A DNA stretch of 64,000 nt from Chara braunii. Taxonomy: Eukaryota > Plantae > Charophyceae. The stretch's first letter is position 1. Every line of letters starts with the position of its first letter. The notes below the pieces were generated by a model. The model was not told the origin of the DNA. It made no database searches and saw nothing but the letters and a program-made list of their open reading frames with translations. The DNA lies in NCBI GenBank assembly GCA_003427395.1, contig BFEA01000043.1, forward strand, positions 929,168-993,167, read 5' to 3'. The translations under genes were made by a program, and so were the position numbers. Positions 1-63,612 of this stretch are shown here, in pieces.

Positions 1-1978
1 ATCCTCATCATGATCATCTTCAGGATGCTGTTCATCGTCATCAACAAAATTCAAAAAAAAAAAAACCTCATCTGCCTTTTCGCCATCATAATTTTCAGGA
101 ATTTCCGATTCTTCCACTCATATCTTAGGAATCCTATTTCCTAGTAAATTCCTTGTTTTTTTTTTTCTTTTTCTTTTCTCCACTATTATTTTCTGATTCC
201 CCTTTGGACGACTCATGAACTATTTGTGCGCGGGTGGGGGGTTGGGGCTTTAAGGAGGATAGCTTTACTCTACAGGGGCTTCACAAGGTGGGGGGTGAAA
301 TGCCCTGGAGGGAGTGGGGGCAGATTGTTGGGGGATGCCCTATTCCGGGGCTGGGAGAGATGTATGGGTTGGCATCATATCCTGGCGGAGGCAGATAGGG
401 GTGAGGGGTTACTTTGGGTGGAATTGGATGCCTTAGTGGAAGTTGGGGGAGGAAGCAGGTATGTCCCAAGCTGGGGCCGATAAGGAGAGCTTGTGATCAG
501 GGCAGTCCTTTTCGGTGGAGGCAGCGGAGGGACAGGGGGAGAGGGAGGGGAAGGGGGGGAAATAATCCACAAAAACGTCCGGAATTCTGATTCTCCTCTT
601 AAGCGCAAACAAATTATTTCGGGTGGGGTGGTGGGTTGGTTCTGAAGGGGAGAGCTCTACTCTGCAAGAGCTTCACAAGGAGGGAGGTGATAGCCCTGAA
701 GGGAGACGGGGAAGATTTTGGGGGTTGCTCTATTCTAGGGCTGGGGGAGATGTATGGGTCGGCATCATATCCCAGCGGTGGCAGATAAGGGCAAAGGGTC
801 GGCAAAGGCATACTTTGGGTGGGAACTGGATGCCTTTGTGGGAGTAGGGAGGGGGGGGAACGGGTTTGTCCCAAGATGGGGCTGATGAGGAGTGTCCATG
901 ATCAGGGGCGGTCCTTTTTGGTGGAGGCAGCAGTGGGCCAGGGAGACGAGGGGGACAGGGGGGAATTTCTATATCCTTTGTTGGGACTTTCCCTGATTCT
1001 TTCTGGAGTCTTCAAAACAAGCACCCTTGTTATTCGTAGTAGTTTGAAGATTCTCTCGGGACTCTAAGGGTCTGCTGGTGGTTTGTACAAAGCTGCACTA
1101 GAATTAGACTGTTATATTCAGGACCCGAGGTTGTTCAATGCCAAAACGACGCTGGCCGGAGTCGGGGGGATGCCCTGTACCTTGCTGAAGGTGAGGGCAT
1201 GAGGTCTTGTAGAGATATATGGGGATGCTATGGGGGGGCATCCGACAACTGGGGGTTGCTGACAGAGGACGACACTGGCCGGAGCTGGAGTGAGTCGCGT
1301 TGCTCTGTAACCTAGCAGATAGGGGGCGTGAGGCCTGGAAGAGTTTGTCAGAGAATAAGTCAGTTTTAGTGAGCTTCGTTATGATCTGTTGCAAATCCCT
1401 TAGATACTCAAGTGTTCAAAAATTGCGGTGGATTTTAGGTGGTGTTTGCGATCATAAAAAAGGATTCGTAGTCTTCTCCTCAGAAACAAAAAAGGTTCTG
1501 GTGTTCTGTAATTCTTGGCAGCATCTGACCTTCTTCCTCATTCCGGATATAGGATTTCAAAGACAGTCGAATCTGGACTGATATCTGCAGAGTTGCTTTG
1601 TTCTGTGGCCCTGGTTTGCCGATGTCAGAACGACGCTGGTCGGAGTTGGGGTGTTGCCCTGTATCCTGCAAATGGCAGGAGTGTGAGGCCTTGTAGAGAG
1701 ATCTGGGGTTTTGCTGAGGGAGGAAGACAATCCAGTGGCGAACCAGGGGGCGCTACCTTGACAACCTATGGGTCCGGGGATAGTCTAGGGGGCGAGAACA
1801 GGTCACTTATGGTAGACGTTGGTTAGGATGGCATTGTCTCTGAGATGTAATGTCCCGGTACAGGGAGGGCTAGGAGTTGTTTTAGGATTAGGAGGCCATA
1901 ATTGCTGATATAACATAGTCTTCTATATTTTTTATCATCATCATTAGTATGATCACAGTTTACATAGAATCAGTAGAA

Positions 1979-5454: not shown

Positions 5455-5700
5455 CATGGACTGACCCCCTGGGTGGCGCGCAGGCAGTGTCCATACAACA
5501 CCCATGGACTGACCCCCTGGGTGGTGCACAGGCAATGTCTATAATAGTACCATGCGTCAGCCCAGGGGAGTGTGTGTCCAGCCGTGCATCATTCTAACGC
5601 CCTGCCGGTGTCCATGCCCAAGGCTGCGGAGTTTTGAACCCACAACCTCATACCACAATGCGCATTTCCAACCGGTGCTCTAACCAATGAGAGATAACTC
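5455..5700 (-). mobile_element. tRNA-derived SINE head (family S1/D)
   Basis: Reverse complement of the 41420-41580 head. A-box-like ctcattggttagagc and B-box ggttcaaaactcc. Confidence 0.75.
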
Positions 5701-13343: not shown

Positions 13344-14060
13344 TTTTTTTTTTTTTTTTTTTTTAACAACGGGCCCAATGCCCAAGGCTGATATTACCAA
13401 TATGAAGATTGAAGCCGGGGTCCTCATAGTCTACCCGGAGTGACCAAACCGAACTTGCTGAGAACCGGGCTCAGCGTCCCTGATTTTTTGATAATGATGA
13501 TGATGATGATGATGACGATGATGATGATGATGAATTTTTGCTGATTCTATGTAAAATGTGAGATAATCATACTAATGATGATGATGCCAATGATGATGAT
13601 GCCCAGTATGTAAAATATGTAGAAGATTATGCTGTATCAGCAATTCTGGCCTCCTAATCCTAGAACAACTCCTAGCCCTCCCTGTACCAGGACATTACAT
13701 CTCAGAGACAATGCCATCCTAACCAACATCAACCATAGCTGACCTGTTCTCGCCTCCTAGACTATGCCCGGACCCATAGGTTGTCAAGGCAGCCCCCCCC
13801 AGTTCGCCACTGGATTGCCTTCCTCCCTCAGCAAAACCCCATATCTCTCTACAAGGCCTCCCACTCCTGCCATTCGCAGGTTACAGGGCAACGCCCCAGC
13901 TCCGGCCAGCGTCGTTCTGGCATCGGCAAACCAAGGGCACAGAACAAAGTAACTCTGCAGATATCAGTCCAGATTCGACCATCTCTGAAACCCTATATCC
14001 CGAATGAGGAAGAAGGCCAGATGCTGCCAAGAACTACAGAACACGAGCAAGGTTGATATA
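13344..14060 (-). mobile_element. Non-coding retroposon, inverted homolog of 1500-2140
   Basis: Continuous similarity to the reverse complement of 1500-2140. Poly(T) at left, pseudoknot module at 13415-13480, Alu-like motif at 13845-13907. Confidence 0.85.
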
Positions 14061-14587
14061 AGATGATTGAAAACTATGGAATTTTTTTATTTTTATTTTT
14101 TTCAATCAGCAAAACCTGGCCTCACACTCTATGCTCAACTTCTGGCTTCTCCCCTCTACCAAATGCAACACTCCAAGACAGTATCATCCCCTCCAATGCC
14201 CACCATAGCTGGCATGTTCTCATTGCTTAGATGAAACCCGACCCCTTAGGTTGCCACAGCAGGGGCTATACCCCAGCACCGGCCAGCGTCGTTCTGGCGT
14301 CGGCAAACCGAGAGCACAAAACACCAACGCTTGGTAAGACATCAGATACTACATTGTATATGAGAAGAAAACCAGATGTCACCTCGGAATGTAAGTCGGC
14401 CAGATAAGCATGACATAACCCCTTTTTTGATGATGATGACGATGATGATAATGATGATAATGATGATGATTCATGATGTGTTACTCTTGTCCTGGATCTT
14501 TAAAGACAACTGTCTGTCTCCCAGTCACAATCGTAGCGTTGTTACTCAGAAGATTGGAAAAGAGGCTCTCCTCCCTCTTACACTTCC

Positions 14588-16149: not shown

Positions 16150-17547
16150 TTTTTTCTTTTTCTTTTTTTTTAAGCAACCCCCGCCAGTGCTAGTGCTGCT
16201 GATACAAGCAGTCACCACTAGCACCTAGAGGGAGGCTCCATCTATTGGTGGGGAGCGTCACCAGCTGGAAAATGGGTCCAGCGTCCCTTAAACAGAAAAG
16301 TATACAGAAGAGTTTGGGAACCGTGATTATGAGGCCTGCCAGCATTGATTACCCTGTATCACAGGGGATTGACTGAGCAGGTATATCTGTTGTGTTTAGT
16401 TGTCCTCCGTATCTCTTCACCCCTCGGAGGAGGGCGCCAGAAGAAACATTAAGCACTGATACAACCTTCTAAGGCATGAAGTCGTGATTGGCGGAACCCT
16501 TCCCCAGGGGGCACCGGGGAGGGTTCCTCTAACTGCAGTACAAAACAGAACACGTTTAAGATAAGATTTCAGCCAGTGACAGGGCATGGGGCGGGAAGGG
16601 GTCAGGGAAATCTGCAGGAGGGCGTAGCGGGAATGAGGGCTCTATGTTAGTCCAATCGTTAAAAACCAATCTATAGTCTCTCATCTCTTCTAAATCTCGT
16701 GTCCCTTCTCTTTTGTCGCCGCTCCACTCCAGCTTTGCTATCCAACCTTCTCTTTCACCCCCTATCCAGTCTGTACAAAAAATCATGATCCGTCTCCTAA
16801 TGTCTCCCATTTGCTTAAGAAGGTCTGCTTGTGACCTTGTGTCTGACCATCTCTGTGTAAGTTCCAGATGGATCTGTTGTCGAATCTGTTCCTCAATCTC
16901 TGGGCCCTCCACCCTTACCTTTTCCATGGCCAGAGTGCATCTTTGCCACCAAAATGACCATATCACCGCCCTTCTGCCTAGTCTGTACATGTTCTCTACA
17001 AAAGTTGTGGTTGTTGCTGCCAGCTGCCAATGGCCCGCCAGTATAACCTGCCATGTCCAGGGCTAGGGTGTATCTGGTACCATTTTCCGCCAGATGCGGT
17101 CTCACCATTTCCATGTGAACTGAGCAATCGGGCATTGCATAAAAATGTACTCAATGGTCTTTGCCTTTCTGTAAAAGGGGAAAAGGTTCTGACATCGCTG
17201 GCACCATGGGGGCAGTAGTCCCCTTTGTTCGAGGTTTGTGCGATTTGTCAAACCAATCATTTGTTGGCAGGCAGCGGTGAGCTATCTGCCACTGTAGAGA
17301 GGTACATTTCATAGGCTTTGATTTTTGTTCCTTAAACCATTTGATTGGTGAAAGGAGGGTGCGGTCCACGTTCAAGTGTCTAGCCCATCTATCGTTTATC
17401 ACGTCTTTTAAATGCCTTTTGGGTCTGAGCACCCTGTAGGCCGCTTTGACCGATATCTGGTATAGGCTAGTATGGCCTGTTCTAGACACTCCTCTCTTTT
17501 GAGCATGCTGCCAGATCCATTCTGTCGGGTCAAAACACCTCCCATCC
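16150..17547 (-). mobile_element. 5'-truncated LINE (ORF2 C-terminus + 3' UTR)
   Basis: SLQWQIAHRCLPTNDW and ETIEYIF-C-like zf-RVT region. The 3' UTR has the internal-loop motif (16335-16381), the pseudoknot module (16234-16287) and poly(T). Confidence 0.85.
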
Positions 17548-20500
17548 ATGCAAAGAAGGAGAGAAATTCAAGAGTTCCTTCTTCCAATAAACAAAGCTCT
17601 TACTGATCTTCAAAAAGACAATCTAGAAATCCCAATACCTAAAGATGAAATATGGACAGCTTTGATGATGATGGAAGAAGAGAAGACACCAGGCCTAGAT
17701 GGACTGCCCAAGGAATTCTGGGAAGTTATGCGGGATTTTATCCACCAAGATCTTATGGACTTCTACCAAGAGGTATGGTCCTCTGGAAGGATGGGAGAGA
17801 TAGTGGGTCAGGGGGTGCTAACACTACTGTACAAAAAATGAGATGCAACGAATATTCGTAATTATAGACCAATCAACCTCCTCACAGTCATTTACAAGCT
17901 GCTAACAAAAGCTCTATCAAACAGATTACTGAAAGTAATAGCAGATATCATTCATCCCACTCAAACAGGCTTCATATCTGGTAGGAATATTCAAGACAAT
18001 ATCCTGCTGGTTAATGAAATGATCAAAAATTCAAGACAATCGAAACAAAATGCGGCTCTTGTATTCATAGATTTTGAAAAGGCATACGACCATGTCGATT
18101 GGGTCTTTTTAGACATGTGTTTGGAAAATTTTAATTTTGGGTCTTCTTTCAAAAGATGGATACAAATCCTACACTCAGAGGCAACAACAAAAGTTATGAT
18201 AAATGGTAATTTAGCTCCTCCAATTCCGTTAGAACGATCAGTACGACAAGGTGATCCGATAGCACCCTTCCTCTTCGTCATTATGATGGAAGCACTTGCG
18301 GCAAATCTAAGACATAACAAGGATATCAAACGTATTAAGGTTGCATCTATCCCGGAAGAGGTCATCCCTGTGTGCTCACTATTTGCGGATGATCTCTCAC
18401 TATTAACAGATGTCTCAGAGGACAACATGAGGGCTATTAAGAGAATGATGGATAAGTTTTGTTCTCTCTCAGATATGAAAATTAACTGGGGTTCCAAAAC
18501 CCAAGGATGGTGGATTCATCACCAAGGGGTGAGACCACCAAAGGAACCTAGAGTTCATTGGATTCCATCTTCCTCACCAATCAGAGTCCTAGGGATTACC
18601 TTATCAGCAGAAGGAAAACCTGAAATAAACAATGAGTAGATCTCTAAACCAGCCCTAGCGAAAATGGAAATATGGAAAGATAAACACACATTATTAATTG
18701 GAAGGACGCTAGTGATTAACAATGTAATTCTAGTGTCCCTATGGTACAAATCAGTTTTATGGCCCTTAGATAAGTTGAATCTCCAATCACTACAAAGACA
18801 GATTACAGCATACTTATGGAGAGGGAATCATGAATGCAAAAATGTAATCAGCAGAGTAGTCTGGCAAACACGGATCCAACCCAAAACAAAAGGGGGACTA
18901 GGTATCCTGGATCCTCACACGCAGGCTCAGGCCTTATCCATCCAATGGATCAAGAGACTGCTCTTCAATCCACAAGTTCCTTGACAGGCTCTAGCATGGG
19001 AACAAATAGCGAGGCTGGCACCAGAAGAACCAGCAGACACTGACCCAATGATGTGGTTAGAGANCCGGTANTGGTCGATCCCAANAGGTGTCTCTCAGAC
19101 AANAAATCAGGAAGTAGAATCANACAGACAAGCAGNAANGGCAGATATAAAAAANGATCCATTCTGGCCTGACCTCCTTAGGACGTGGCGCAGACTACCT
19201 CTACCTGACAAATGCCCCCCGAAGAGGTGGGAAGAGGTCTGTCAACAATCACTTTTCAATAATAGACTAATTACAGATTCACAAGGATGTATGTTACATT
19301 GCATGGACTCTCCCTGGAGGGGATGGGTAAAAAAAGGGGTTTAAATGATATAGGATATATGGAATAAAGAAACAAAAGATTGGTACACTTTACCCCAAAT
19401 ATATCCCAAACTTCATTATTGCAGACACTCAGAGCAAGCATTGAATACCATCATTGATCTAATTCCTTTAGATTGGGTAAGAATTCTAAGAAAATGACCA
19501 AACCTCAAAGAAGGAGATTGGGTGGGCTTCAGGGATGAAAAACAACACATTGGGAATGTGGTTATGCTGGGAGAAGATGCAACAGTTCTAGTCTCCATGG
19601 TTTTTATGGACAGTCAAAATATCATCTACACAGGGAAGACCCAAGAAACCAAATGGTACCAGATGGATCAGGTGTTCAAAATAAGAGTTTTGAAAAATAA
19701 AAGTAATTGGTTGGCCTTTAGGCCAACTCAGTCAATCGACAACTTGGCCTTGGATCCAACGCAATGGAAATGGACCTCAAAAGGAGGAAAATGTACCTGG
19801 ACACGTGCAATCCACACCCTAACAGTCAAATCCACATATAGAATGTTGAGACCGTCCCTAAATATAAAAGATAAAGTGGAAGCTAGATGGATGAGACAGC
19901 TGAATATCAGCAAAGACTCTGTACGCTCTATCAAATGGTTTAAGACCATTAGAATCAAACTTGCTAAGGTAGTCTCCCTACAATGGCAGATATATCACCA
20001 CTGTCTCCCTACTAATGATTGGATTATAGAGAGAACTACTCTTGAACAAAGGGGGATAGCACTACCATGGTGCAAATTTTGCACATCAACTTTCCCATCA
20101 AGAACAATCCCAGAAACCATAGAACACATTTTCCTTCAATGTCCAAGTGCAGTATGGCTATGGAGGTGGTGGGACAGAATCTGGAGCCAACTCACAACTT
20201 CAAACCCTTGGCCATGGGATTGGAAAGCCCTTCTATGTGAAACATGGGACCCACCTCTTCATGACGAATTCTCCCAAAATCTATTTAAGGTAGGAAGGAG
20301 AGTCATTTTGTGGGCCCTGTGGCACAGACGTTGCACCAATGAAATGGAAGGTGAGGCTTGAGGGCCCTGAATTCACGGACTCGATAAAAAATCACATCCA
20401 AACTGAGATTTCGGCCCTATGGGATAAACTTAAAGAAAAAATCCAACATTTATCGATTCAATCAGAAATTGACAGTCGCATTCAAAAATTCAGCACAGAC

Positions 20501-20700
20501 TGGCTGGGAGACACTGAGGAAGGAAAAGTGGGAGTGATCAAGGGGGAGGGAGAGAAAAAAGTTAACAGAAAGGGGGGGCAGCCATAATTCAAAAAGATCT
20601 ATCAACTATCTTTTCATGATTGGACTAATGTGGATCCTTCCATCCCTCTGCGTCCGCTTGTTGACTTCCCTGACCCGTTCCCATTATCATCCTTGTGCTT
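17548..20700 (+). pseudogene. LINE ORF2 (reverse transcriptase) pseudogene
   Basis: Mostly in-frame fragments 17548-17841, 18019-18639, 18664-18984, 19048-19344 and 19522-20361, broken by nonsense codons and a late frameshift. Confidence 0.9.
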
Positions 20701-21039
20701 GGTACCTTTGAGTTGGTATGGTTTAGAGTAAGCAAGGGATTATGATCTTAGGAATGGTTAATGGTGCTTGGGGAGATGAAAAATATATGGCGCCCGTCAA
20801 CAGGAGGGTGAAGAGGTACCAACTATTGACTAGGGTCTAGTACATGGGATGTGGGACCTGGTTTTCAACATCCACCTTGAGCTGAGCAGTCATATCTTTC
20901 ATCACATTCAATAGTTCAAATGTTAAGGGACGCTGGACCCGTTTTCCAGCAGGTGCTGCTCCCCACCAATAGATGGAGCCTCCCCAACCCTGCTAGTGGT
21001 GTCTGCTCCTACTAGCACCTCTAGCATTCACTTGGGCCG

Positions 21040-21040
<1 letters not shown>
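17548..21040 (+). mobile_element. 5'-truncated L1/Tx1-type LINE, RT + zf-RVT + 3' UTR
   Basis: KTPGLDGLPKEF, NYRPI, IDFEKAYDHVDW, SVRQGDPIAP, LFADD, GGLGI, C..C...ETIEHIF..C. Several premature stops. 3' module at 20927-20980. Confidence 0.92.
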
Positions 21041-21041
<1 letters not shown>

Positions 21042-21080
<39 letters not shown>

Positions 21081-23190
21081 AATTGGACGTGCTCCAATCT
21101 ATTCGTGGGGAGCAACACGTGCTGGGAACCGGGCCCAACGTCCCATTCAAAAGCATATTGAGAGAGTTTTTGCAGAAAACTTTGAAATACCGGGGCCGAC
21201 TAAAGATGATCGCTATGCAGCCTACCCATCCATCTATGAGCACGATAAAATTTAAAAACAGAGGAAGGATCCTGAATATCAATCACTCATGCACTAACCT
21301 ACCAAAGAGGTCCTACGAATAGGTGAAACCTACTCAATCCACCTACAACCACCACCAGTCATGGCTAGAATCCGCGCGAACGGAAGCTCTTCCGGGCCTC
21401 ACCGCTCCCATCAAGTTAGGTTACAGAGATGCACCACTTGCTCCAGCACTGGCCAGCATCGCTCCCGTTACGACCCCCGATGACCACTGGGGCTGCCCCC
21501 GCAAACAGCCCCCCAGTTCTCTACCAGGCCTCACGCCCCCACTAGGCTAGGTCATAGAGTTGCGCCACCTGGCTCCGGCTCCGGCCAGCGTTGCTCCAGC
21601 ATCGGTCTCCGAGGGGCACTGACTTTTCAACCACCCCTCGCAGGATCATGGGTGGATTTGCCGGGTCTCACCTATTCCTACCACCTCCTCGAAAGGCAAG
21701 CAAATGAAAAACTATGGTGAGTTGGATGATAGATTTGTTCGAGAGAGATCGCCCCTCCCTCCCCTACCCCTCCCCCTTCAACCCTACACTGCCTCCGCCG
21801 AGGAGAGTAACCCACCCTCCCTCGGCCCCAATATAGGACCAATCCTCTCCCCCCTCACCCCAGGAGCACGCAGTTCCCACCTAAAGCATGCCCCCCCACC
21901 CCTTGCCCTTTCCGCCTCCGCAGGGACTGATGTTGGCCCTCACACAGTCCTTGCCCCGGAATAAAGCAACCCCCTACTCCGCCCCTACCCTCTTTGAGAC
22001 ATTCACCCCCCTCCTTGCGATGCCTCTGAAGGATCGAGCTCCCCCCATCCCCTTCCCACCATTCAGCCCTCCAGGAACGATCCAATCCAGCCGATTAATG
22101 ACACACTTACCAAATATCATTTGCTTGGAATTTTATCGAATTTTGTCGATGACGATAACAACGCCCTAAAAACGATGGCATTGAGAACTGATGCTGATGA
22201 TGATGAAGATGATATGATGGCGATGGTGAAGGTAATATCGACTATGATGATGATGATAATGAGCTGATGATTATATTGATAATATTCATGACGTACTGTT
22301 GGTAATGATCACACTAACAAGGCTCTTGATGGTGATGTAAGTAACGATGGTGATGATGATGATGATGATGATGAAAATGATTGATGATGGTGTGCTAACG
22401 AGCACCTTGGATAGCAACCTAAGACTAATGATGATGAAAATGATGATGATGATGATGATGAAAATGCTGACGCACAGCGTCCCATGAAAACTACAAAATG
22501 ATGATGATGAAAATGATGATAATATCGTCGAACTTCATAGCCCTTGATGGTGATGACAAAATGTACCCTGATACTGATGATGATGATGACGAGCAGCGTC
22601 CTGATGAGGATGACGATCGTCCGGTTAATGATGATGGTGACGATCTCGCCCGGTTGATGATGATGGTGACGAACGCGCGAGTGTCGCAGATGACAAAGAT
22701 ACATACAAATCAAAAACAACGCACTCGATGTCGCCTCCCATCCTCCTCCCACTCCACGTGAGCACGCGCTCCTCCCTTCCGTCCGAGTCATACCAACCAC
22801 CCGCCACAGCGCTACGCAGACCAAGGAGCAAAAGCCATAGAACGCTAAACTTCTCAAGGAGACCCACCTCCTCTCGTAGGCAGGCTCCCCCTCACCCAAC
22901 ATGTCATCCTATAACACCACTGGATAAGGCGCGGAGCTGGAGATGGCACCGAAGTGCTTTTAAAAGGTAGGCAGCACCGAGTCGCGCTTCATCTCCCCAC
23001 CCGACCGCCGTCCTCCTCATCTCGCCATCACCAAGGCGCCATCGCGTCGAAACCACACGCGTCATACCCAACTGCCGCTTCGCGCGCGCAAGTTTCCAAG
23101 CTGCAGGGCGCCCCCGAACTGCCCGTGTGAGAAAGCCAACCTGGCAAGGCGCAGCGCACCCGGAAGCGCTGCGCCCCCCCTCTCTACGGC
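21042..23190 (-). mobile_element. Long non-coding modular retroposon
   Basis: On the minus strand: GC-rich head (22700-23190), (CAT)n-rich tract, G-rich segment, two Alu-like motifs (21392-21454, 21521-21586), pseudoknot module (21090-21145) and poly(A). Same module order as 28286-30985. Confidence 0.6.
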
Positions 23191-23192
23191 GC

Positions 23193-23224
<32 letters not shown>

Positions 23225-23229
<5 letters not shown>

Positions 23230-24975: not shown

Positions 24976-25375
24976 AATCTATTCGTAGGGAGCAGCACGT
25001 GCTGGGAACTGAGCCCAGCATCCCAAATGGAAATTTACATAGAATTTTGAAAATTTGAGATACTGGGGTCATTACCCGGCTTTGGCTAAGAAAATTTCGA
25101 GCTAATTAGATAATTACTACGACAAACTTCAAAAAAAAGGTCTGTCCATAACAAACACACCACCACAGAGGTCCTACAAATGCTCAAAACCCTGTGGATC
25201 CCTAGCAACCCTTCTAAAGCTCTCCAGCACTGTCTTACTCCCTACCGAGTTCTTCCAGGCCTCACACCCCCACCCTGCTGGGTTACAGGGCAACACGACT
25301 CGCCCCAGCTCCGACCAGCGTCGTCCCAGCAGCAACCCTTGGTTGTCTCTTAGAATGCCCACCCCAAAGCATCCC
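24950..25375 (-). mobile_element. Truncated non-coding retroposon with Alu-like motif
   Basis: Poly(T), CGTG-variant pseudoknot module (24977-25024), hairpin E (~25062-25080), Alu-like motif (25252-25316). Confidence 0.7.
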
Positions 25376-25379
25376 CATA

Positions 25380-25620
25380 TTTTATTTATTTATTTATTTT
25401 TAAACCCCGTTGGTGTTAGTGGTGCTGATAAGAGCAAACACCACTAGCGCCTGGGGAGAGGCTCCATCTATTGGTGGGGAGCAGCACCTGCTGGAAAACG
25501 GGTTCAGCGTCCCATTATACAAGTTGAGTTTTGGAATGTATCAAAACAGTGTTGTGTGAGATTCCCGCCAGCATTGATTGCCCCTGGATCCGCATGATTA
25601 ACTGAGCAAGCAATTGGGAA
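25380..25620 (-). mobile_element. LINE-type 3' tail
   Basis: (TTTA)n tail, terminal hairpin, pseudoknot module (25460-25513), internal-loop motif (25567-25608). Confidence 0.75.
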
Positions 25621-25899
25621 GGAGGGGAACCTCTTCGCCCTGAACTCGACGCCAAGTCTCTGCTGCAACACCCTAGTTCCTTCCTCACCCTATTAATGAG
25701 TACTTTGGAGACCTGAGTAATAACTGAGCAAGACATCATTAGGATCGTAGGGGGCATATTGGTGTGGGTAATCCTACATAAGGCAGTGTAATAGTGCAAT
25801 CAAACTTTGTTCAGTGATTCGCTATAATTGACCTTCTACCTTCTTGTTCTAAAAACCTCTCCTCCTCACGGTGCTGTAAAAGTTCTTTAGTAGATGATG

Positions 25900-26218
25900 A
25901 GGGTTTCAGATTAGGGATATGCCTTTCGATTGTGCTGGGCAGTTAATCCCCTCGGTCGAGGGCAATCAATGATGCTCATCAGACTAATCGGTGTGCCTAC
26001 GTGTCGGTTCCGTTCACCGTTCATGTTTGTAAGTAGGATGGACACGTGGCATGTTTACATGAACCCTGTTTGTTTACAGACCACCTACTTCTAAATGTCA
26101 AGGGACGTTGGACCCGGATTCCAGCAGGTGTTGCTCCCCACCAATAGATGGAGCCTTCCCGAGCATGTTAGTGGTATCTGCTCTTATCAGCACCTTTAAC
26201 ATTCACCCGGGTTGTTTC

Positions 26219-26297
<79 letters not shown>
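25900..26297 (+). mobile_element. LINE-type 3' tail with long poly(A)
   Basis: Internal-loop motif (25937-25977), pseudoknot module (26102-26156), terminal hairpin and ~75-nt poly(A). Confidence 0.8.
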
Positions 26298-26462
26298 CAG
26301 GTGGGCGATACCGGCCAGAGGTCAGCTGGCAGCATCAGGACCGAGCTTCTTCTCTTTCAAAAAAAGAAATAAAAACCTTCTCTTTCACGAAAAAAAAATA
26401 AAATTTAAAACCTTCAGTTAATATGCGAAAGGAAATAAAAACCTTATTTTTCTATCAAGGCG

Positions 26463-26493
<31 letters not shown>

Positions 26494-26503
26494 CAAGACC
26501 TAT

Positions 26504-26839
26504 GTAGCACCGTGTTCACGTTCAGAGGTGAACACGAACCCGAACGCGAACAAGTGTCAAAAACCCTCCGAACGCGAACATAAAAAATAATAATAAAAAA
26601 CAAAAAACGTTCTCAGAAAAATCTGAAACAAATATATGTTATGTAAAATAACAATACAAGCAACTTTTGCCTTGGAGTCATGTTCAAATTCGTAGCCAAT
26701 CATGATTTAAAAATCAAAAACCAATTTATTTATTTATTTATTTTTAACGGAAAATAAATTATGTTCGCGAGCTGTTTGTGCGAACGCGCGAACACGTTCG
26801 CGCGAACGTGAAGGGGCGCGAACACCTTCGCTGTGCTAC
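26504..26839. mobile_element. Probable MITE with short TIR (gtagcac/gtgctac) and GCGAAC/GTTCGC subterminal repeats
   Basis: The internal segment tatgttatg...caacttttgcct.gg.gtca is shared with MITE 51585-51875. No clear TSD. Confidence 0.5.
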
Positions 26840-26859
26840 GCTGAGCAACACATCAAACC

Positions 26860-28285
26860 TTTTTTTGAAAAGCAGAGGATTAAAAAGATATCTAAAAAAG
26901 GACATGCCAGCATTGATTGCTCTGAACTGTAGAGGATTTACTGAGCAGGTTGCTGAATTCCCAGTATAGAGACTCAAATCATATATAACTGCTTACTAGG
27001 AATTCACCTGACTCTGAGTTACACCATTGGTAGCCTCTTAACCAGTTTAGGAGGTTCGGCCAGGTGGAAAGAGGGATGAGGGGGGCAGGGTCTGCGTCTA
27101 GGGGGCGACTGGAAAAGACAACTTGATCCTCCTATTTCCGTTCTCCGTCCTGACTGAGCCCACTAAGATTGTGTTGGACAGGTTCTACAGTGTCTCGGCC
27201 ATACCAGCTGAACTCAACTAAGGTGTTATTTGGTGGTGGGAACAGATCGGGGAAATCTGAGGCGGGGCGGAGGGGTATGTCACTGGAGATCTCAGTCCAT
27301 TTATGAAAAACAAACGATAGTCCTTTTGTGATGATTCCAGACGATCATTTTCGTCTAGATGCCAACCATCCCATTATATCCATGCAATCCATCCTCCTCG
27401 TTCCCCACCCAACCAGTCCATGCAGAATTATTGTAGTTTATGAATAATATATGATCTTCTTGTGAGAATTTTCATCCCTTGTACCGTCTTTTTTCACTGG
27501 GTTTTGATTGCAGTTTCAATCATTTCCTCAATTATTTCCGTTATTTCACCACTACCAATGCAGGCACCTTCAAGTGCTAGAGTGCATATGCGACGCCATA
27601 TAGCCCATAACACTTCTGCCCTCCCAATCCTAAATAAATTGGTTGTGAAGGTCGACGTTTGGGCCGACCAGTGACCAGTTAGTAAGGCTCTTCGTTCCCA
27701 TGGCCAGTCTTTGTCCGACTGTAGTTGGTTCCAAATCCAGACCCATCCACACCACGTAACGATAGAAGTTGGGCACTGTAGGAAAAAGGTGCTCTATTAT
27801 CTTGTTGGTCTTTCGAGAGGGGAAGCCCCCCACACACGCTAGACACCAAGGGAGAGCCAACCTTTTCTGTTCCAGGTGCGTATGGTCTACGAGCCATGCG
27901 TTCGTCGGTAAGCATCGGTGGGTAATTTGCCATTGAAGCGAGGCGGTCTTGGCCGGTCTGTTCTTCACTTCTTTAAACCATTTGATAGGTCTCAGGACTT
28001 CATTTGGGACTTTTAGGTGTCGAGCCCAGCGATCTACTATCCGGTCCTTCAGATTCAGTTTAGTCCTGAGCATTCGATAGGTCGCTTTAACACCCAATGT
28101 ATGGAGGTACCGATATTTGGGTCCTCCGTTCTTTGTTGGAATCTTTCATCTCAATTTTGCCACATCTATGGGGAGATCCTGGATTGGTACTTCCGGCCTA
28201 AATGCCACCCAGGATTTTTTTTCCTTTAAAACTCTCACCCTGTGAACCATTTTGACATCAATCCAAAACACTTCATCAGGCTCAA
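26860..28285 (-). mobile_element. LINE 3' fragment
   Basis: SLQWQITHRCLPTNAW, LPWCLAC and IEHLF motifs. Internal-loop motif at 26906-26949. Confidence 0.85.
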
Positions 28286-30985
28286 GGAGCAACACGTACT
28301 GGGAACCAGGCCCAGTAGCCCTTTTTTTTTGAAGTACCGGGACCATTACCCGGTTTCGGCTTGAGAGTATCCTCCAAGATCATAAACAAACTGTTGAGAA
28401 TCGGGATAGATGATGAGAAAACTATGAATATAGATGATGAGAAAAACTACGAATCTTTTTTTACGATCGCTAAACACCTCCTGAAATCCACCCGCAATTC
28501 TCCGAACAGTCAAGTATCTAAGGGAATTCCAGCAGATCATAACAAAACTCACCAAAACTGACTTATTCTCTGCCAAACTCATCTAGGCCTCACGCCCCCT
28601 ATCCGCTAGGTTACAAAGCAACACGACTCACTCCATCTCCGACCAGTGTCGTCATGTGTTAGCAACCCCAAACTGTCCATTAGGATGCCCCCGCATAGCA
28701 TCCCCAAATCTCTCTACAAGGCCTCATGCCCTCACCTTCGGCAAGTTACAGGGCATCACCCCGGCTCCGGCCAGCATCGTTCTGGCATGGAACAACCACG
28801 GATCCTGAATAGAACAGTCTAATTCCAGTGCAGCTTCGTATAAACCACCATCAGTCCCTCAAAGTCCTGAGAGATTCTTCAAACTACCAGGAAATAACAA
28901 GGGTGCATGTTTTGAATATTCCAGGAAGAATCAGAAAAGGTCCCAACCAAATTCAAGCAAAGGATATAGAAATTCCCCCCTTTCCCCTCATCCCCCTGCC
29001 CCACCGCTACCTCCACCGAAAAGGACCGCCCCTGATCACGAGCACTCCTCATCGGCCACAACTTGGGACAGACCCATTTCCCCCCCGTACTCCCACAAAG
29101 GCATCCAGTTCCCACCCAAAGTATGCCTCTGCCAACCCCTTGCCCTTATCTGCCTCCATTGGGATATGATGGCGACCCATACATCTCCCCCAGCCCCAGA
29201 ATAGAGCATCCCCCAAAATCTGGCCCGTCTCCCCTCAGGGCAATCACCTCCCTCCTTGTGAAGCCCCTGCAGAGTAGAGCTCGCCCCCAACCCACCCCCT
29301 CACCAGAAGTAATTTGTTTACACTAAAGAGGAGAACCATAATTCCAAACGTTGTTGTAGATTATTTCCCCCCTTCCCCTACATCTCCCCCTATCCCTCCG
29401 CTGCCTCCACCGAAAAGGACTGCCCTGATCACAAGCTCTCCTTATCGGCCCCAACTTGGGATATACCTGCTTCCTCCCCCTACTTCCACTAAGGCATCCA
29501 GTTCCACCCAAAGTATGCCTCAGCCACCCCCTCACCCCTATTTGCCTCCGTTGGGATATGATGTCAGTCCATACATCTCTCCTAGCCCCAGAATAGACCA
29601 ACCCCCAAAATCTTCCCCCACTCTCTCCAGGGCATTTCACCCCCCACCTTGTGAAGCCCCTGTGGAGTAGAGCTCTCCTCCTTAAAACCCCAACCCCCCA
29701 CCCAGACAAAAATAATTCATTAATGCGCCCGAAGAGGAACCAGAAATTAATAGTGGAGAAAAGAAAAAACGAGCCTCAAGAGTTTTAGGAACTCAATTTC
29801 CTAAGATTTGAGTGGAAGAATAGGAAATTTATGAGAATTATGATGAAGAAAGGTAGATAAGAGTTTTCTTTTTTTGGATTTGTTGATGATGATGAACAAC
29901 ATCCTGAAGATGATGATGATGAAGATGATGATGACAACCAACTCACCTGCTGATGTGAAAGGCAAACAAGACCTTGGAAAGCAGCATCTAATGATAACAA
30001 AATGATGATGATGATGGTAATGATGAGAATGAAGACAGAATGATGTTGATGATCATACTGAAGAACAGTACCAACAGCGGCCTATGATTTACAAATTGAT
30101 GATGATGATGATGATGACGCACCGCGCCCTGTGATGACAAAAGGATGATGATGGTGCTAATGACAAGCACCTTGGATGATAGTCTAGTGATGATGATGGT
30201 GAGCAGCTTCGCCAACAACACCTTATGATGGTGAACTATTGATGATGGTAATGATACTGGCATAATGACAATGATGATGATGATAACGAGCAACCCTAGC
30301 GGCGCCCTATGAGGACACAATGATGATGATGATCATCATGATGAGCAGGGTGGATAATGACGCCACCCACGCCTTGATGTTGATGACGAGCGACACCCTG
30401 ATGATGATGATAGTGATGACCCTGATGCTGATGACGAACCATTACCATGATGATGATGTCGAACCACGCCCTGTTGATGATGATGGTGATGATGATGATG
30501 ACGACGAACAGCACCCTGATGATGATGACGAACCCTGACTGTGCTGTTGATGATGGTGCTGGTGATGATCAACGCCCTGTTGTTGATGCCGCGCAGCGCC
30601 CTGATTATGCTGACGCACCCACTTCCTCATGATTGCAGTCGCCACTGCACTCGCACTTCAGTTTACCAAGGGCTGACTCCACTGTACTCCACCGACGTTG
30701 ACATAGCCAACGCCTCCCAGGCCATATGCCACGTGCAAAACCGCAGCAGCAATGAAGTGAAACGTGGAACTCCCAGAAGAAAAAAGCCAACGGGAGTCAG
30801 TCCATCCGCCACATCAGCCTGTGACGTGGTGTGGACAAGCACCTCCGGTCACCTGCGCATGCGCAAAGCGCCTGGTTGAGAGAAGAGATGGCGGCCGTCG
30901 CCACCGCGCGCCTTCACCATGACCCACCTGTGCGCTTTCCCAGCCCAGGGCGGGGCGCGGTGCTCTCGGTAGCGCCTCGCCCCCA
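28286..30985 (-). mobile_element. Long non-coding modular retroposon (homolog of 1-1480)
   Basis: GC-rich head, (CAT)n-rich tract, paired G-rich repeats, two Alu-like motifs (28583-28644, 28712-28772), hairpin E (28336-28353), partial pseudoknot module (28286-28318). Confidence 0.7.
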
Positions 30986-30989
30986 TCTC

Positions 30990-33900
30990 CTGATCTTGTC
31001 TTTTCGAGTAACCCTTATGAAAATAGCCCCTGATTAAGTGTTTTAGTTGTGACCGATCAAAAAGGTTCACCAGCACCTCCCCCGGTCTGACTGCAAGTAT
31101 TTCCCCTACCCGAGTTGCATCCCCACTTAATACCACCCAGTCCCCTTCCTGTACTGTTGGCCCCCGTCGTAGAGTCCGCACCCATGCAAGGGGGAGGGCA
31201 AAGAGGATCTGATCCAACCTCTCCCCTATCCTTTGGCAATGGGGAAACTTCTCTCTCAGTTGCTCTTCTGAGAGTCGATCATTCCTTGCTTGGTCCTATA
31301 AGTGTCTCACCCTTGTGATCCCTTTCTTCACCCATCCATTCCACGGACGATCTGAGTTGAGCAACACCCGCCCCTGCCGGTCCGTTATCCAACGGTTTTC
31401 GAAGAGTGGTTGGCGAGCGACTTTCTCCCACCTTCTGGGGAATGGTCTATCCGGGAGCGGGAGCCGCCGCCAATCTTTAATTAGATTGGCCCGAAATCCG
31501 TTTTTTCGTAGATCCCGGCAGGCTGCGGCGCGATCTGAGTGTGATTGTGGCCGGGTGGGGGGTCTGGGGATTGTCCAGAAGACGTCATCTAGCCAGTCAA
31601 TATGGTGTGTGGTGGGTGTAGCCTCTGGAGCCAACCTCGATAGTTGTTCCCAGGCTAGAGGCTCCCATGTAATGTCGGGGGTGCAAATAAGCCGCTTCAG
31701 CCATTGGAGCGAGAGAGCGACCGTTTGGGTGGCAGGGTCAAGTATGCCCAGACCGCCTTGTACCTTTGGTTGCACCACCACATTCCAGGTCATCCGACTA
31801 ATAGTGTGTTGGGTTTCGTGGTTGCGTCTCCATAGGAAAGTTGTCACTTGTTGCTTCAAGGTCTTTGACGCTTCTCTTTAAAGAGGTCAGATTGATGAGT
31901 TATACGAGATTGATGCCAAGACCGCGTTATTTATCACGAGGGCCCTACCCAAAGTGACGTATGTTTATCTTTCCAGGTTCCCATCTTTTGTAGGGTCGGG
32001 CATATTATCCAATTATCATTACTAGCAGGCTTTTCTTCGGATGAAAGTGGAATTCCTAGGACTCTGATGTGGGTTTCCAAGGGGAGCAACGTTACATGGG
32101 GCTGCTCTGGGGGTCTTCCACCATCATGATGCATCCACCATCCCAATGTCTTGTTGCCCCAGTTAATTGCCATGTCTGAGAGGGCGCAAAACTGGGTCAT
32201 TAGTTTTTCAATTTCCTCCATATTTTGTGTTGAGGCTTCTACCATCAGAGTGAGGTCGTCTGCGAACAATGAGCATATTTGTATTGCCTCTCGTGGGATA
32301 GAGGTCGCCTGAATCCTACTAATATTTTGGTTGGCTCTAAAATTGGTCGCTAGGGCTTCCATCACTACCACAAAAAGATATGGTGCAATCGGGTCCCCTT
32401 GTCGTACCGATCGCTGCAGGGGGAAGTCCGGAGCCAGGTTCCCATTAATATGAACCCGAGTGATAGCATTCTGATGATGATGAAGTATTATCACCCATCT
32501 TCTAAAGGTGCTTCCAAAGTTAATTTTTTCTAGACATTTATCCAAGAAATACTAATCCACATGGTCGTATGCGTTCTCAAAGTCAATAAAGAGGAAGGCG
32601 ACATTACACTTGGACTGTCTAGATATCCTTGACAACTCATTTACAAAGAGGATATTAGCCTGGATGCGTCGCTTTTTAAGGAAGCCCGTTTGTGAGGGAT
32701 GAATGATTTGTTGTGATGTCCGCGCCATCCGGTTTGCTAATGTTTTGGATAACATTTTATAGACCACAGTTAGTAATGTAATCGGCCGGTAGTTACGGAT
32801 GTTCATTTTGTCTCTTTTTTTGTATAGTGGCGTAAGAACCGCCTGATGCACCGCTTCCCCCATCACTCCCTCTTCCAGTACTCTATGGTAAAATATCATC
32901 AAGTCATCTGCCATTAGGGTCCAGGAAGTTTCCCAAAACTCTTTTGGAAAATCATCCACATTCGAGGTCTTCTCTTCCTCCATCTGCATAAGAGTCATCC
33001 ATATCTCTTCCCTGGTGAGTAGACGGTCTAGTGTCACTTACATCTGTTGGGGGAGCGATTTAGTAAGGGGGGTGAAAAAATGGTCTATTTCTATATTTCT
33101 TGTGGCGATATTTTCACCTTGGGTACGAGAGGTGAAGAAATCTTTGTAGAAATCCCTGGCCACCTTCATACACTGTGGCGTGGAGGTGGCTAGCAACCTC
33201 TCTGGTGCAGTGGGATCCATGAAGGCCTCAATGGTCTGTCTCTTTGCCTTGGCCCTTGCCAGGCCAAAGAAGTCAGAGTCCATGACCCCCTCAGTGTTGT
33301 GTCTGGAGAGTTTACCTCTAATCCTTATGTCATGCCATCTATAGGTTGCTTTTTTGGAGTGTCTGAAGGTGAGGGGTGAGGACTTGTTGTTGTAGATTTT
33401 GAATCTGATATTGAATCTCTATTTCCTCTTGATAACGCTTTGCTGCCAATTCTTTGAAGTATTTTTTACACTTGCGGCATAGAAAAAAAAAACCATTGTT
33501 AAACCATGTGACTTCAGAGTCAAAGTGTGTTTTTTTTTTGTGCCAGTAGGCCCATGTGTCTTGGACCAGGTGTGCAAAACCCTGCTTTTGTAGGGGGGAG
33601 GTATTGAGTTTGAAAAAGTCCGCGTCGTGGCTCGGTATCTGGCAGAAAGTGAGGGTGACTCAGCATAGGGCATGATTTAGTCTCATAAAGGGGCTACAGG
33701 GAAGCAGATATGCAAACTGCATTGCACCTGCTAGGTCCTCTGACATAAGTATCAGGCCGATTCTGGACCTAGAACAGGTTTCTGCCCCTGTTGTGCGGAA
33801 GCAGGAGTACCTTCTTTCCGTGGGAAAGACTCTTCTAAAAAAATCGAATAAGTGCAAGGTAGAGTTTAGTTCCTCAATGATCCTTTCATCAGATTCTATG

Positions 33901-34420
33901 TACGAGGGGCAAGGGGTGGGGATCCTCCATCTATCCAGCGTCCGGTCAGGGGCAGCATTAAAGTCACCAGCTAGGATCACCGATACTTCGGCGGGGATCT
34001 GTTGACGCAAGACCTTGAAAAATTATCGTCTGTCCCATTCAGAAATTGGTTCATATACGCAAATAATATAGATCAACTCAAGCTCGAGCATCGCAAGTAC
34101 CGAGACCCACCTACCCTCTTCCTGGTCTGTTACCCAATGGACCAGTGTCACCCTCGAGGTCGGTGGTATTCATATGGCCACCCCCACACTCCCTGGTCTT
34201 GGGGCATGAGCTCAGGCCTGGTGTGGCCATACCATGTGATGCACCCGGCGGTGTTCTGGGGTATCATGTAAGTGGGTCTCTTGTATGCACACCACATCTG
34301 TCCAGTCTTTGCCTGGGACCCCCTTGATCAATTCCCAGATCGCCTGTCTTTTGTCAGGTGTGGCCATTGCTAAGCCATTAACGTTTAACGTGCGAAGGTC
34401 AAGGTCTGCCTCCCGCAGAC
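30990..34420 (-). pseudogene. LINE ORF2 with apurinic-like endonuclease and RT
   Basis: TLNVNGL, VCIQETH, YIICVY, ILAGDFN, SRI.LI (APE); NYRPITLL, IDFENAYDHVD, SVRQGDPIAP, LFADD. Multiple stops and frameshifts. Confidence 0.92.
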
Positions 34421-34432
34421 ATCCCCAAATCT

Positions 34433-34791
34433 CTCTACCAGGCCTCACACTCCTGCATCAGCAGGTTACAGGGCAACACCCCAGCACCGACCAGCATCGT
34501 TCTGGCATTGAACGACCGCAGATCACTGAGTATATCAGCAATGGAACCATCTAATTTGAGTTGCTAGGAGTCCCCTAAATCCTAAATCATTCTTAAGACC
34601 CCCATTGGCAACCATGAACAACCAACAAAACTGTGGATCATAGGAACATTCAGACCGAAAAAACCACCTGCCTTAGTGCTTTCAGCAGCCCAACCCTATC
34701 TGCCTCCCCCCTATGTCCCGATACTCAATCTCTACCAGGCCTCACACCCCCAACTGCTAGGTTACAGAGTGGCATGACCCACCGCCCCGAC
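34433..34791 (-). ncRNA. Two SRP-Alu-domain-like motifs (34433-34492, 34731-34791) upstream of LINE ORF2
   Basis: Sense ggggtgttgccctgtaacctgctgatgcaggagtgtgaggcctgg, and a second copy containing ctctgtaacctagcagttgggggtgtgaggcc. Structural identity is inferred. Confidence 0.45.
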
Positions 34792-34979: not shown

Positions 34980-35190
34980 GCACTTGTGCTTTAACCCTTG
35001 GGTGGTGCGCATGCACCGTCTGTAATAGCTTACCTGTGTCAGCCCAAGGGGGTGTGCAAGTGACCGTGCGTTATGTAAACTCCTCCGGTGTTTCTGCGCA
35101 GAGGTGCGGAGTTTTGAACCCGCAACCACTCAGACCATAATGCACATTGACAACCGGTGCCCTACTCACCACTGAGCCATAGGGCCTAGG
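34980..35190 (-). mobile_element. tRNA-derived SINE head (S1/D)
   Basis: Minus-strand tggctcagtggtgag A-box and ggttcaaaactcc B-box. Homologous to 41420-41620. Confidence 0.7.
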
Positions 35191-63439: not shown

Positions 63440-63612
63440 TCTGTAATCCTTACCATGGACCAACCCAAGGGAGGGGTGTGTCCAGCCGTGTGTTCATTCT
63501 AACGCGCTGCCGGTGTCCATGCGCAAGGCTGCAATTGAGTTTTGAACCCACAACGTCAAACCACATTTCGCATTTCCAACCGGTGCTCTACCCACTGAGC
63601 TAATCGGCCTAA
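63440..63612 (-). mobile_element. tRNA-derived SINE head (S1/D)
   Basis: Minus-strand tagctcagtgggtagagcaccggttggaaatgcg...ggttcaaaactc. Homologous to 41420-41580. Confidence 0.8.

What the first reader, a model, noticed from the sequence alone, without database searches (positions are those of the whole stretch)
21392..21586. SRP-Alu-domain-like RNA fold with covarying kissing loops, repeated ~11 times in LINE-dependent elements
Seen: a ~60-nt motif occurs at 1154-1214(+), 1277-1342(+), 1638-1700(+), 13845-13907(-), 21392-21454(-), 21521-21586(-), 25252-25316(-), 28583-28644(-), 28712-28772(-), 34433-34492(-) and 34731-34791(-), always on the element's sense strand. It reads GCU-[GGRG..loop..CYCU]-GUAA-[CCUR..loop..YRGG]-GRGYGUGAGGCCUGG. 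The stems covary (GGGGC/GCCCU vs GGAGU/GCUCU; CCUA/UAGG, CCCA/UGGG, CCUGC/GCAGG, CCUU/AAGG). In the long-loop copies the two loops stay complementary despite different sequence: CAAGU/ACUUG (21392 copy), AGGU/GCCU (21521 copy), UCGU/GCGG (28583 copy). Established: the SRP RNA Alu domain has this layout (GCC-helix3-UGUNR U-turn-helix4-GGCUGAGGC, with a helix3/helix4 loop-loop pseudoknot). It binds SRP9/14, which primate Alu SINEs use to dock on ribosomes and capture L1 ORF2p. 7SL-derived SINEs are known to me only from animals. Inference: these elements carry an SRP-derived or convergent Alu-domain mimic, often in tandem pairs like dimeric Alu, to hijack LINE machinery in a green-lineage genome.
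Basis: partly seen in the sequence, partly recalled or inferred. Interest (0 to 1): 0.9.

Follow-up and report, generated by a model that had tools for sequence, protein, structure and literature searches.

The report
Alu-like RNA modules in stonewort retroposons
Non-coding jumping elements of a stonewort alga (Chara) carry, a few hundred bases before their poly(A) tail, repeated copies of the small signal-recognition-particle RNA fold that human Alu elements use to borrow a LINE's reverse transcriptase, a device I found reported in mobile elements of vertebrates only.

Summary
The motif is real. All 11 copies are present, plus a degenerate twelfth. They form the three-way junction of the SRP RNA Alu 5' domain: 120 of 121 stem pairs are kept, with compensatory changes. 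G4·U23 is in every copy; G24 is in 10 of 11 and in 99% of family contigs at the eleventh. Both copies in the finding best-hit Rfam Metazoa_SRP, weakly. The host is Chara. The elements are kb-long, ORF-less and poly(A)-tailed; four of six end in the 3' tail of a Chara L1. The modules are internal, with no B box and no helix-5 partner, so they are not SINE1. They match the 46-nt Alu domain shown sufficient for L1-driven retrotransposition, and embedded Alu also helps Pol II RNA. Best reading: 7SL-derived SRP9/14 docking modules. Binding and 7SL descent are untested. The scan noted this motif before on other DNA of this genome.

The parts
21535..21579 (-). Alu 5'-domain module, long-loop class (upstream module of element E4); loop 3 GUGGCG, loop 4 GCCUAG; private G24A change in this copy
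21404..21447 (-). Alu 5'-domain module, long-loop class (downstream module of E4); ungapped over Rfam Metazoa_SRP positions 1-44
21042..23193 (-). Element E4: about 2.15 kb, GC-rich 5' end, (CAT)n-rich part, G-rich part, two modules, L1-type tail, poly(A); inserted antisense at a TT/AAAA site between the tail and the poly(A) of an L1
21080..21149 (-). 3' tail of E4, homologous to the 3' end of a Chara braunii L1 (L004 15213-15317, 74% with poly(A))
21042..21079 (-). poly(A) of E4
17536..21041 (+). 5'-truncated, broken L1 (RT and C-terminal pieces, 3' tail) that E4 inserted into; its poly(A) is at 23196-23225
1161..1198 (+). module, short-loop class (element E1, 1-1482, 85% identical to E5)
1284..1327 (+). 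module, long-loop class (E1)
1645..1682 (+). module, short-loop class (element E2, 1498-2163, other tail, poly(A) ending at 2163)
13863..13900 (-). module, short-loop class (element E3, 84% identical to E2)
28728..28765 (-). module, short-loop class (element E5, about 28255-31000)
28594..28637 (-). module, long-loop class (E5)
34746..34791 (-). module, long-loop class (5' half of split element E6)
34449..34485 (-). module, short-loop class (5' half of E6)
25266..25309 (-). module, long-loop class (3' half of E6; tail and poly(A) follow to 24950)
25378..34419 (-). nested 5'-truncated L1 (endonuclease start near 34397) with further insertions; it splits E6, with an 8-nt target-site duplication at 34420-34427 and 25370-25377

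Best explanation
The motif is the 5' part of the SRP RNA Alu domain (helices 2-4 around the UGU U-turn, about nt 1-46), most likely captured from the alga's own 7SL RNA and then duplicated and shuffled among several families of kb-long, non-coding, L1-dependent retroposons. Shown here: the fold, its conserved G4-U23-G24 triad, its sense-strand position 270-500 nt before the element's 3' end, the L1-type tail, and the presence of family RNA in poly(A)+ libraries. Inferred: after transcription (probably Pol II) each module binds SRP9/14 and parks the RNA on ribosomes, including those translating L1 ORF2. The nearby L1-like tail and poly(A) then win ORF2p from the L1 mRNA, and the RNA is copied by target-primed reverse transcription. 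Long-loop modules probably close the loop 3-loop 4 pseudoknot; short-loop modules keep only the junction and U-turn. A 4-bp helix between the bases just before and just after the module may stand in for helix 5a, as in circularly permuted Alu constructs; this last step is weak.
For: Rfam Metazoa_SRP is the best family for both copies in the finding (E 0.033 and 0.037 over 4227 families) and for the long copy in L001 (E 0.0014). Stems: 120/121 pairs, two-sided changes, RNAalifold agreement. G4-U23 in 15/15 copies, G24 in 14/15; the one exception is private (99% of contig depth reads G at 21555). This is the triad named critical for SRP9/14 binding in PMC12265939. Loop 3 reads GU-N-G-Y-G in five of the six long window copies (GUCAUG in the sixth), as in the Rfam consensus. 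Loop-loop pairing in the BC200 register beats permuted loop pairs (p 0.006 with 8 loop pairs, 0.033 window only, 0.05 with one per lineage); the family-majority letter at 21545 gives GGC-GCU, the BC200 pairing quoted in PMC12265939, and that at 21414 gives a G13-C pair. Modules are more conserved than flanks in the more diverged pairs: 100 vs 74%, 88 vs 67%, 64 vs 55%; summed contig depth is 5,000-34,000 over the modules and 46-133 in the spacer below them. The same module sits in families with unrelated bodies and two kinds of tail. Tail shared with a C. braunii L1; insertion at TT/AAAA. PMC11760393: the 46-nt 5' domain alone binds SRP9/14 and gives about 86% of Alu retrotransposition from a Pol II promoter, the 3' domain is not needed, and an Alu embedded in a Pol II RNA raises its retrotransposition.
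Against: No binding, probing or transposition data. The host 7SL gene was not found, so descent is not shown. Rfam scores are far below the gathering threshold (14-22 bits against 70) and came from small, chosen regions; the whole-window scan gave no SRP hit at E<10. Only 15 related copies; the third loop-loop pair was allowed two positions after looking at the data; the longest-helix test in any register is not significant (p 0.21). Five of 11 copies cannot form the pseudoknot that PMC8137916 calls necessary for the human fold. Single copies are not unusually stable, and 21392 and 21521 have other minimum-energy folds. In the two young pairs the modules are not clearly more conserved than flanks (90 vs 84%, 89 vs 92%). 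These elements have an L1-like structured tail, which could recruit ORF2p without SRP; about 25 such tails lie in the window and most have no module next to them. Chara SRP9 and SRP14 were not looked up.
Confidence: 0.62

Rival explanations
1. The modules are 7SL-derived and bind SRP9/14, but the benefit is RNA stability, export or shielding from translation and decay, not ORF2p capture at the ribosome; the L1-like tail alone recruits ORF2p.
For: The structured tail is homologous to the L1 3' end; most tails in the window have no module beside them. SRP9/14 affects Alu-RNA levels, and a U-turn mutation lowers BC200 expression (PMC12265939). No helix 5, which contacts SRP9 in the closed fold (PMC4238359).
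Against: In the human assay RNA levels did not explain the 80-90% drop without the 5' domain. The modules cluster near the 3' end and are multiplied. Many module-less tails may be 5'-truncated copies or L1s.
Confidence: 0.15
2. A convergent mimic: the fold arose in the element by selection for SRP9/14 binding and does not descend from 7SL. It works as in the best explanation.
For: No S domain, no 3' helix-5 strand and no B box. The fold is small, and its conserved letters are the structurally needed ones. Host 7SL not available.
Against: Ungapped fit to Rfam positions 1-44 with 23 of 44 consensus letters, including loop letters. The bases after helix 2 read GUGAGGCCUGG, close to the start of helix 5 of human 7SL (human sequence from my own knowledge), outside the minimal fold.
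Confidence: 0.12
3. An inert relic: a 7SL fragment was once captured and has been carried along by tandem duplication and recombination, with no present function.
For: Truncated and degenerate copies exist (14209-14299; L001 1304-1364; L007 69031-69112). Gene conversion could raise identity among copies. G-rich strands pair easily through G-U.
Against: Two-sided compensatory changes in helices 3 and 4, slid registers pair at only 56-64%, an invariant G4-U23 wobble, remodelled short-loop copies that keep every stem, and higher conservation than flanks in old pairs.
Confidence: 0.07
4. An unrelated structured signal read by L1 proteins or another host factor; the SRP likeness is chance.
For: These elements hold many other hairpins and pseudoknot-like tails. 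Rfam scores are weak.
Against: The C. braunii L1s seen here carry no such module, neither before ORF2 nor in the 3' UTR. Three separate regions each returned an SRP family as best hit among 4227. Helix order, spacing, triad and loop letters all match.
Confidence: 0.04

Closest known systems
SRP RNA (7SL) Alu 5' domain; Rfam RF00017 Metazoa_SRP; minimal SA46 RNA
   Same: Helix 2-3-4 three-way junction, G4-U23 wobble, UGUNR U-turn, 44-46 nt span; in long copies the loop 3 hexamer and a 3-pair loop-loop register.
   Different: No S domain, no downstream helix-5 partner, not at an RNA 5' end, multiplied; half the copies have helix 3 cut to a 3-nt loop.
SINE1 families: Alu, B1, Tu (Euarchontoglires), Urop (shrew mole), SINE1-1_EBu (hagfish)
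   Same: Non-autonomous, LINE-mobilised, Alu-domain fold on the sense strand, often more than one unit. Hagfish SINE1 also joins the Alu domain to a LINE-derived tail.
   Different: SINE1 has the 7SL part as a 5' head with A and B boxes, keeps both 5' and 3' ends of 7SL, is about 150-300 nt and is known from vertebrates only. Here bare 5' domains lie inside 1-3 kb elements of an alga.
SVA (SINE-VNTR-Alu), especially SVA_F1 with a 3'-transduced sense Alu
   Same: kb-long composite, non-coding, L1-mobilised, Pol II-type RNA with repeats; an embedded Alu is reported to promote its retrotransposition (PMC11760393).
   Different: Hominoid only. The core SVA Alu-like part is antisense (own knowledge), and SVA has no L1-derived structured tail.
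Plasmodium falciparum and other reduced SRP Alu domains
   Same: Precedent for an Alu domain that keeps the UGU junction and binds SRP9/14 and ribosomes without the loop-loop pseudoknot (PMC8137916), like the short-loop class.
   Different: Those are true SRP RNAs with long helices 3 and 4 (P. falciparum), not mobile elements.

Membership tests
SRP Alu 5'-domain fold | Three-way junction of helices 2, 3, 4 | tested here: met
   120/121 pairs; two-sided changes; RNAalifold
SRP Alu 5'-domain fold | G4-U23 wobble and UGUNR U-turn with G24 | tested here: met
   G4-U23 15/15; G24 14/15, family majority G at the exception
SRP Alu 5'-domain fold | Loop 3-loop 4 pseudoknot | tested here: inconclusive
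   Possible in 6 of 11 copies; permutation p 0.006-0.05 on few related loops; impossible in the 5 short copies
SRP Alu 5'-domain fold | Binds SRP9/14 | not testable with these tools
   Needs a gel shift or pull-down
SRP RNA gene (7SL) | Full helix 5 and S domain; Rfam gathering score | tested here: not met
   14-22 bits against 70, S domain absent, no downstream partner above shuffles
SINE1 (7SL-derived SINE) | 7SL-derived part forms the 5' head | tested here: not met
   In E4 the modules begin about 1.6 kb after the 5' end
SINE1 (7SL-derived SINE) | Internal Pol III promoter (B box) and short length without T runs | tested here: not met
   No B box within 90 nt of any module; elements 1-3 kb, most with T5 runs
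SINE1 (7SL-derived SINE) | Keeps 5' and 3' ends of 7SL (helix 5 closed) | tested here: not met
   No downstream complement above shuffles; only a 4-bp helix with upstream bases
SINE1 (7SL-derived SINE) | Descent from the host 7SL gene | not testable with these tools
   Host 7SL not in the window or in 276 kb of C. braunii loci; no whole-genome search available
L1-dependent non-autonomous retroposon | No RT or endonuclease ORF; poly(A) end | tested here: met
   Longest ATG ORFs 32-197 aa, the longest lying in the (CAT)n stretch; poly(A) at E2, E3, E4, E6
L1-dependent non-autonomous retroposon | 3' tail shared with a partner LINE | tested here: met
   E4, E5, E6 and L001 tails align with the 3' end of the L004 L1; E2 and E3 share only the first hairpin
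L1-dependent non-autonomous retroposon | Target-site duplication at an L1 endonuclease site | tested here: inconclusive
   E4 sits at TT/AAAA, with any duplication merged into A runs; none of 9 nt or more found for E2, E3, E4, E6

The most novel reading that the evidence does not exclude
A streptophyte alga independently evolved the Alu strategy in a new form: the bare 46-nt SRP9/14-binding domain became a portable, multipliable ribosome-docking module inside long Pol II-type non-coding retroposons, closed by an upstream strand (natural circular permutation), with a second class that dropped the kissing loops. One C. braunii copy behind a tRNA-like head suggests that it also entered tRNA SINEs.
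Probability: 0.5. Interest if true: 0.88.

Novelty: new variant of a known kind. Interest (0 to 1): 0.76.

Why it matters
Reviews up to 2024 list 7SL-derived mobile elements from three vertebrate lineages only. A case in a charophyte alga would show that docking on ribosomes through SRP9/14 is a general, repeatedly found way to take over LINE proteins. Its form matches what a 2024-25 human cell study engineered and predicted might exist: a 46-nt 5' domain, sufficient on its own, working from Pol II RNA. Hundreds to thousands of natural variants, in two structural classes, would give a comparative data set on which parts of the Alu fold matter for retrotransposition (pseudoknot, helix 5, copy number, distance to poly(A)). 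The modules can be dropped straight into the existing Alu reporter assay.

Tried and rejected
1) 'An L1 carries the modules just before ORF2': copy 34433 lies about 50 nt upstream of an L1 endonuclease start. Rejected: it is a nested 5'-truncated L1 with an 8-nt duplication; the two halves of the host element rejoin and match L001 at 75% over 787 nt, and six C. braunii L1 endonuclease starts have coding-like sequence upstream and no module. 3) A downstream helix-5 partner: none above shuffles. 4) Whole-window Rfam scan: no SRP hit; ARAGORN: no tRNA. 5) Pattern scans: viral contigs 0, bacterial and archaeal genomes 0; metagenomes 1 contig, L001. 6) Homologue search with the L1 C-terminal piece: blank, which says nothing of longer kin. 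7) Host 7SL: not found in loci or in the scan's notes. 8) Two primary papers on tertiary pairs and protist SRP RNAs were not held. 9) One search was a mis-sized promoter scan and carries no information.

Full report
Observation. Each parses as helix 2 (3 bp), helix 3 (4 core bp), a UGUNN turn, helix 4 (4-5 bp) and the helix 2 partner, followed by a strand near GUGAGGCCUGG. The two in the finding span 21535-21579 and 21404-21447 on the minus strand. In the 11 window copies 120 of 121 stem pairs are standard. On an alignment of 15 copies (11 window, 3 from contig L001, 1 from C. braunii L007) 94.5% of cells pair, against 56-64% when partners are slid; four pairs show two-sided changes (G-C/A-U in helix 3; C-G/U-A and A-U/G-C in helix 4), and the third pair of helix 2 varies among C-G, U-G and U-A. 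The copies are related, so the shuffle control there is not a probability. RNAalifold finds the same junction unprompted and adds a 4-bp helix between the bases before and after the module, with wobble changes only. A sequence-blind descriptor hits 9 of the 11 copies and 4 other sites, against 1.3 sites per shuffled window. A covariance model finds one more, degenerate copy at 14209-14299. Single copies are not more stable than shuffles, so the case rests on comparison between copies.

Two classes. Six window copies have a 12-15 nt top to helix 3 with a GU-N-G-Y-G loop (GUCAUG at 34746); five have a 3-nt loop and a longer helix 4. Only the first class can kiss. The register that fits all long copies is the one used by BC200, quoted as GGC-GCU in PMC12265939: nt 15 and 14 with the first two bases of loop 4, nt 13 with the third or fourth. 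Own-loop pairs beat permuted pairs: p 0.006 with 8 distinct pairs, 0.033 for the window alone, 0.05 with one per lineage and without L007; a register-free duplex energy gives 0.006-0.04; the longest-helix test gives 0.21. The latitude at nt 13 was chosen after seeing the data, and L007 was picked from weak hits, so this is suggestive. Contigs of a DNA run add independent family letters: the majority at 21545 makes the 21521-type pairing GGC-GCU, the majority at 21414 gives a G13-C pair in the 21392 type, and 99% of depth at 21555 restores G24, so the UAUGA of that copy is private.

Match to SRP RNA. Scanned on 500 nt, both copies of the finding return Rfam Metazoa_SRP as best family (16.7 and 16.5 bits; E 0.033 and 0.037; gathering score 70); the 21392 copy aligns without gaps to positions 1-44 with 23 consensus letters. 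The long copy in L001 scores 21.6 bits, E 0.0014. The whole-window scan shows no SRP hit, as expected for a 44-nt piece of a 299-nt model. [quoted passage not shown] There is no S domain, no downstream partner for the strand after helix 2 and no B box. The host 7SL gene was not found, so descent versus convergence is open; the ungapped fit, the loop letters and the strand after helix 2 favour descent.

Host and elements. The window's RT pieces are L1-type and closest to Chara braunii proteins (61-66%). Earlier notes of the scan named Chara first; the protein match confirms it. The 11 copies lie in six insertions: E1 and E5 (85% alike), E2 and E3 (84%), E4, and E6. E6 is split: copies 34731 and 34433 and copy 25252 rejoin across a 9-kb nested L1 with an 8-nt duplication, and the joined element matches contig L001 at 75% over 787 nt. 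L001 (BFBZ01010938.1; by my memory an assembly from the C. braunii project) holds five modules or remnants in one element. E4 is complete: 23193 to 21042 on the minus strand, with a GC-rich start, (CAT)n and G-rich parts, two modules, a tail and 38 A, inserted at TT/AAAA between the tail and the poly(A) of an L1. The tails of E4, E5, E6 and L001 align with the 3' end of a C. braunii L1 in L004 that has ORF1-like and APE-RT frames; E2 and E3 share only its first hairpin. Modules end 270-500 nt before the element's 3' end. Length and T runs argue for Pol II-type transcription (inference). Clear duplications were not found for E2, E3, E4 or E6. C. braunii L1s carry no module. In 276 kb of C. braunii loci only one partial and one divergent copy occur, so this window is enriched.

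Abundance and RNA. On 21085-22180, summed contig depth in DNA run X1 is 5,000-34,000 over the module bins, 130,000-206,000 over the tail and 46-133 in the spacer between them. This is not a copy number, but it shows that the modules are the widely shared part of the body. In the three more diverged element pairs the modules are more alike than their flanks (100 vs 74%, 88 vs 67%, 64 vs 55%); in the two young pairs there is no clear difference. Oligo-dT RNA reads cover tail and modules. They come from other copies (almost none 99% alike); the strand bias at the tail is about 4:1 in the direction expected for element-sense RNA if the library is dUTP-type, and it is weaker and mixed over the modules. 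Read-through from host genes is not excluded.

Mechanism. In human cells the 46-nt 5' Alu domain alone binds SRP9/14 and gives about 86% of Alu retrotransposition from a Pol II promoter, the 3' domain is dispensable, and an Alu embedded in a Pol II RNA raises its retrotransposition (PMC11760393). The Chara module spans the same nucleotides. I therefore infer that the modules bind SRP9/14, bring the RNA to ribosomes making L1 ORF2p, and let the L1-like tail and poly(A) capture the protein (confidence 0.62). Short-loop modules would keep the junction and U-turn without the pseudoknot, for which P. falciparum SRP is a precedent (PMC8137916). Rivals: SRP9/14 binding for RNA stability or export (0.15), a convergent mimic working the same way (0.12), an inert relic (0.07), an unrelated signal (0.04). 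None of the binding, docking or transposition steps was tested.

Comparison and novelty. It works like Alu or hagfish SINE1 but fails SINE1 membership: not a 5' head, no B box, no closed helix 5, kb length. In build it is nearer to SVA. Published 7SL-derived SINEs are limited to Euarchontoglires, shrew moles and hagfish (PMC7245038; bioRxiv 10.1101/2024.08.25.609555). My paper searches found no plant or algal case, but the library lacks most subscription journals and I could not check Repbase. The scan had noted this motif before on other pieces of the same genome; those notes are not independent support. Verdict: a real feature, a new variant of a known kind, interest 0.76.

Noticed in passing
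L007:33561-33605 (-), C. braunii: A divergent Alu 5'-domain-like fold (Rfam Metazoa_SRP 1-44, E 0.19; loops AGC/GCU) sits directly behind a tRNA-like head; sibling heads at L007 38870-38950 and 60486-60557 carry other bodies. Possible tRNA-7SL chimeric SINE; single case, picked from weak hits.
   Followed up: partly
window 58384-58439 (+): Type III hammerhead-like sequence with intact CUGAUGA and GAAA cores but weak stems II and III (30.6 bits, gathering 48.5).
   Followed up: no
window, about 25 sites (e.g. 20920-21040 +, 25385-25530 -, 26100-26245 +): L1-type 3' tails beginning with a GGGAYG hairpin, often inserted antisense into one another's ends, giving deep nesting.
   Followed up: partly
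window 34995-35180 (-), with relatives at 5492-5691, 41426-41859, 63395-63611: Repeat family with a tRNA-like stretch (relaxed ARAGORN call, tRNA-Cys-like), about 200 nt upstream of the 5' half of E6; link to E6 not established.
   Followed up: partly
window 232-965 (+) and 28973-29717 (-); single unit at 21822-22051 (-): G-rich internal unit of about 350-390 nt, repeated in E1 and E5 and present once in E4, upstream of the modules.
   Followed up: no
window, hairpins flanking the modules (e.g. 21480-21520 -, just 3' of 28712 and 34433): A small hairpin precedes most modules and a G-rich hairpin with varying stem sequence follows the upstream module of each pair; part of the repeated unit, not analysed.
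   Followed up: no
L002:53994-54092 (+), C. braunii: U6 snRNA-like copy above the Rfam gathering score, probably a retrocopy.
   Followed up: no
L001:1-95 and 1552-1646: The contig's ends overlap exactly, so it is a collapsed, circularly permuted repeat unit.
   Followed up: yes
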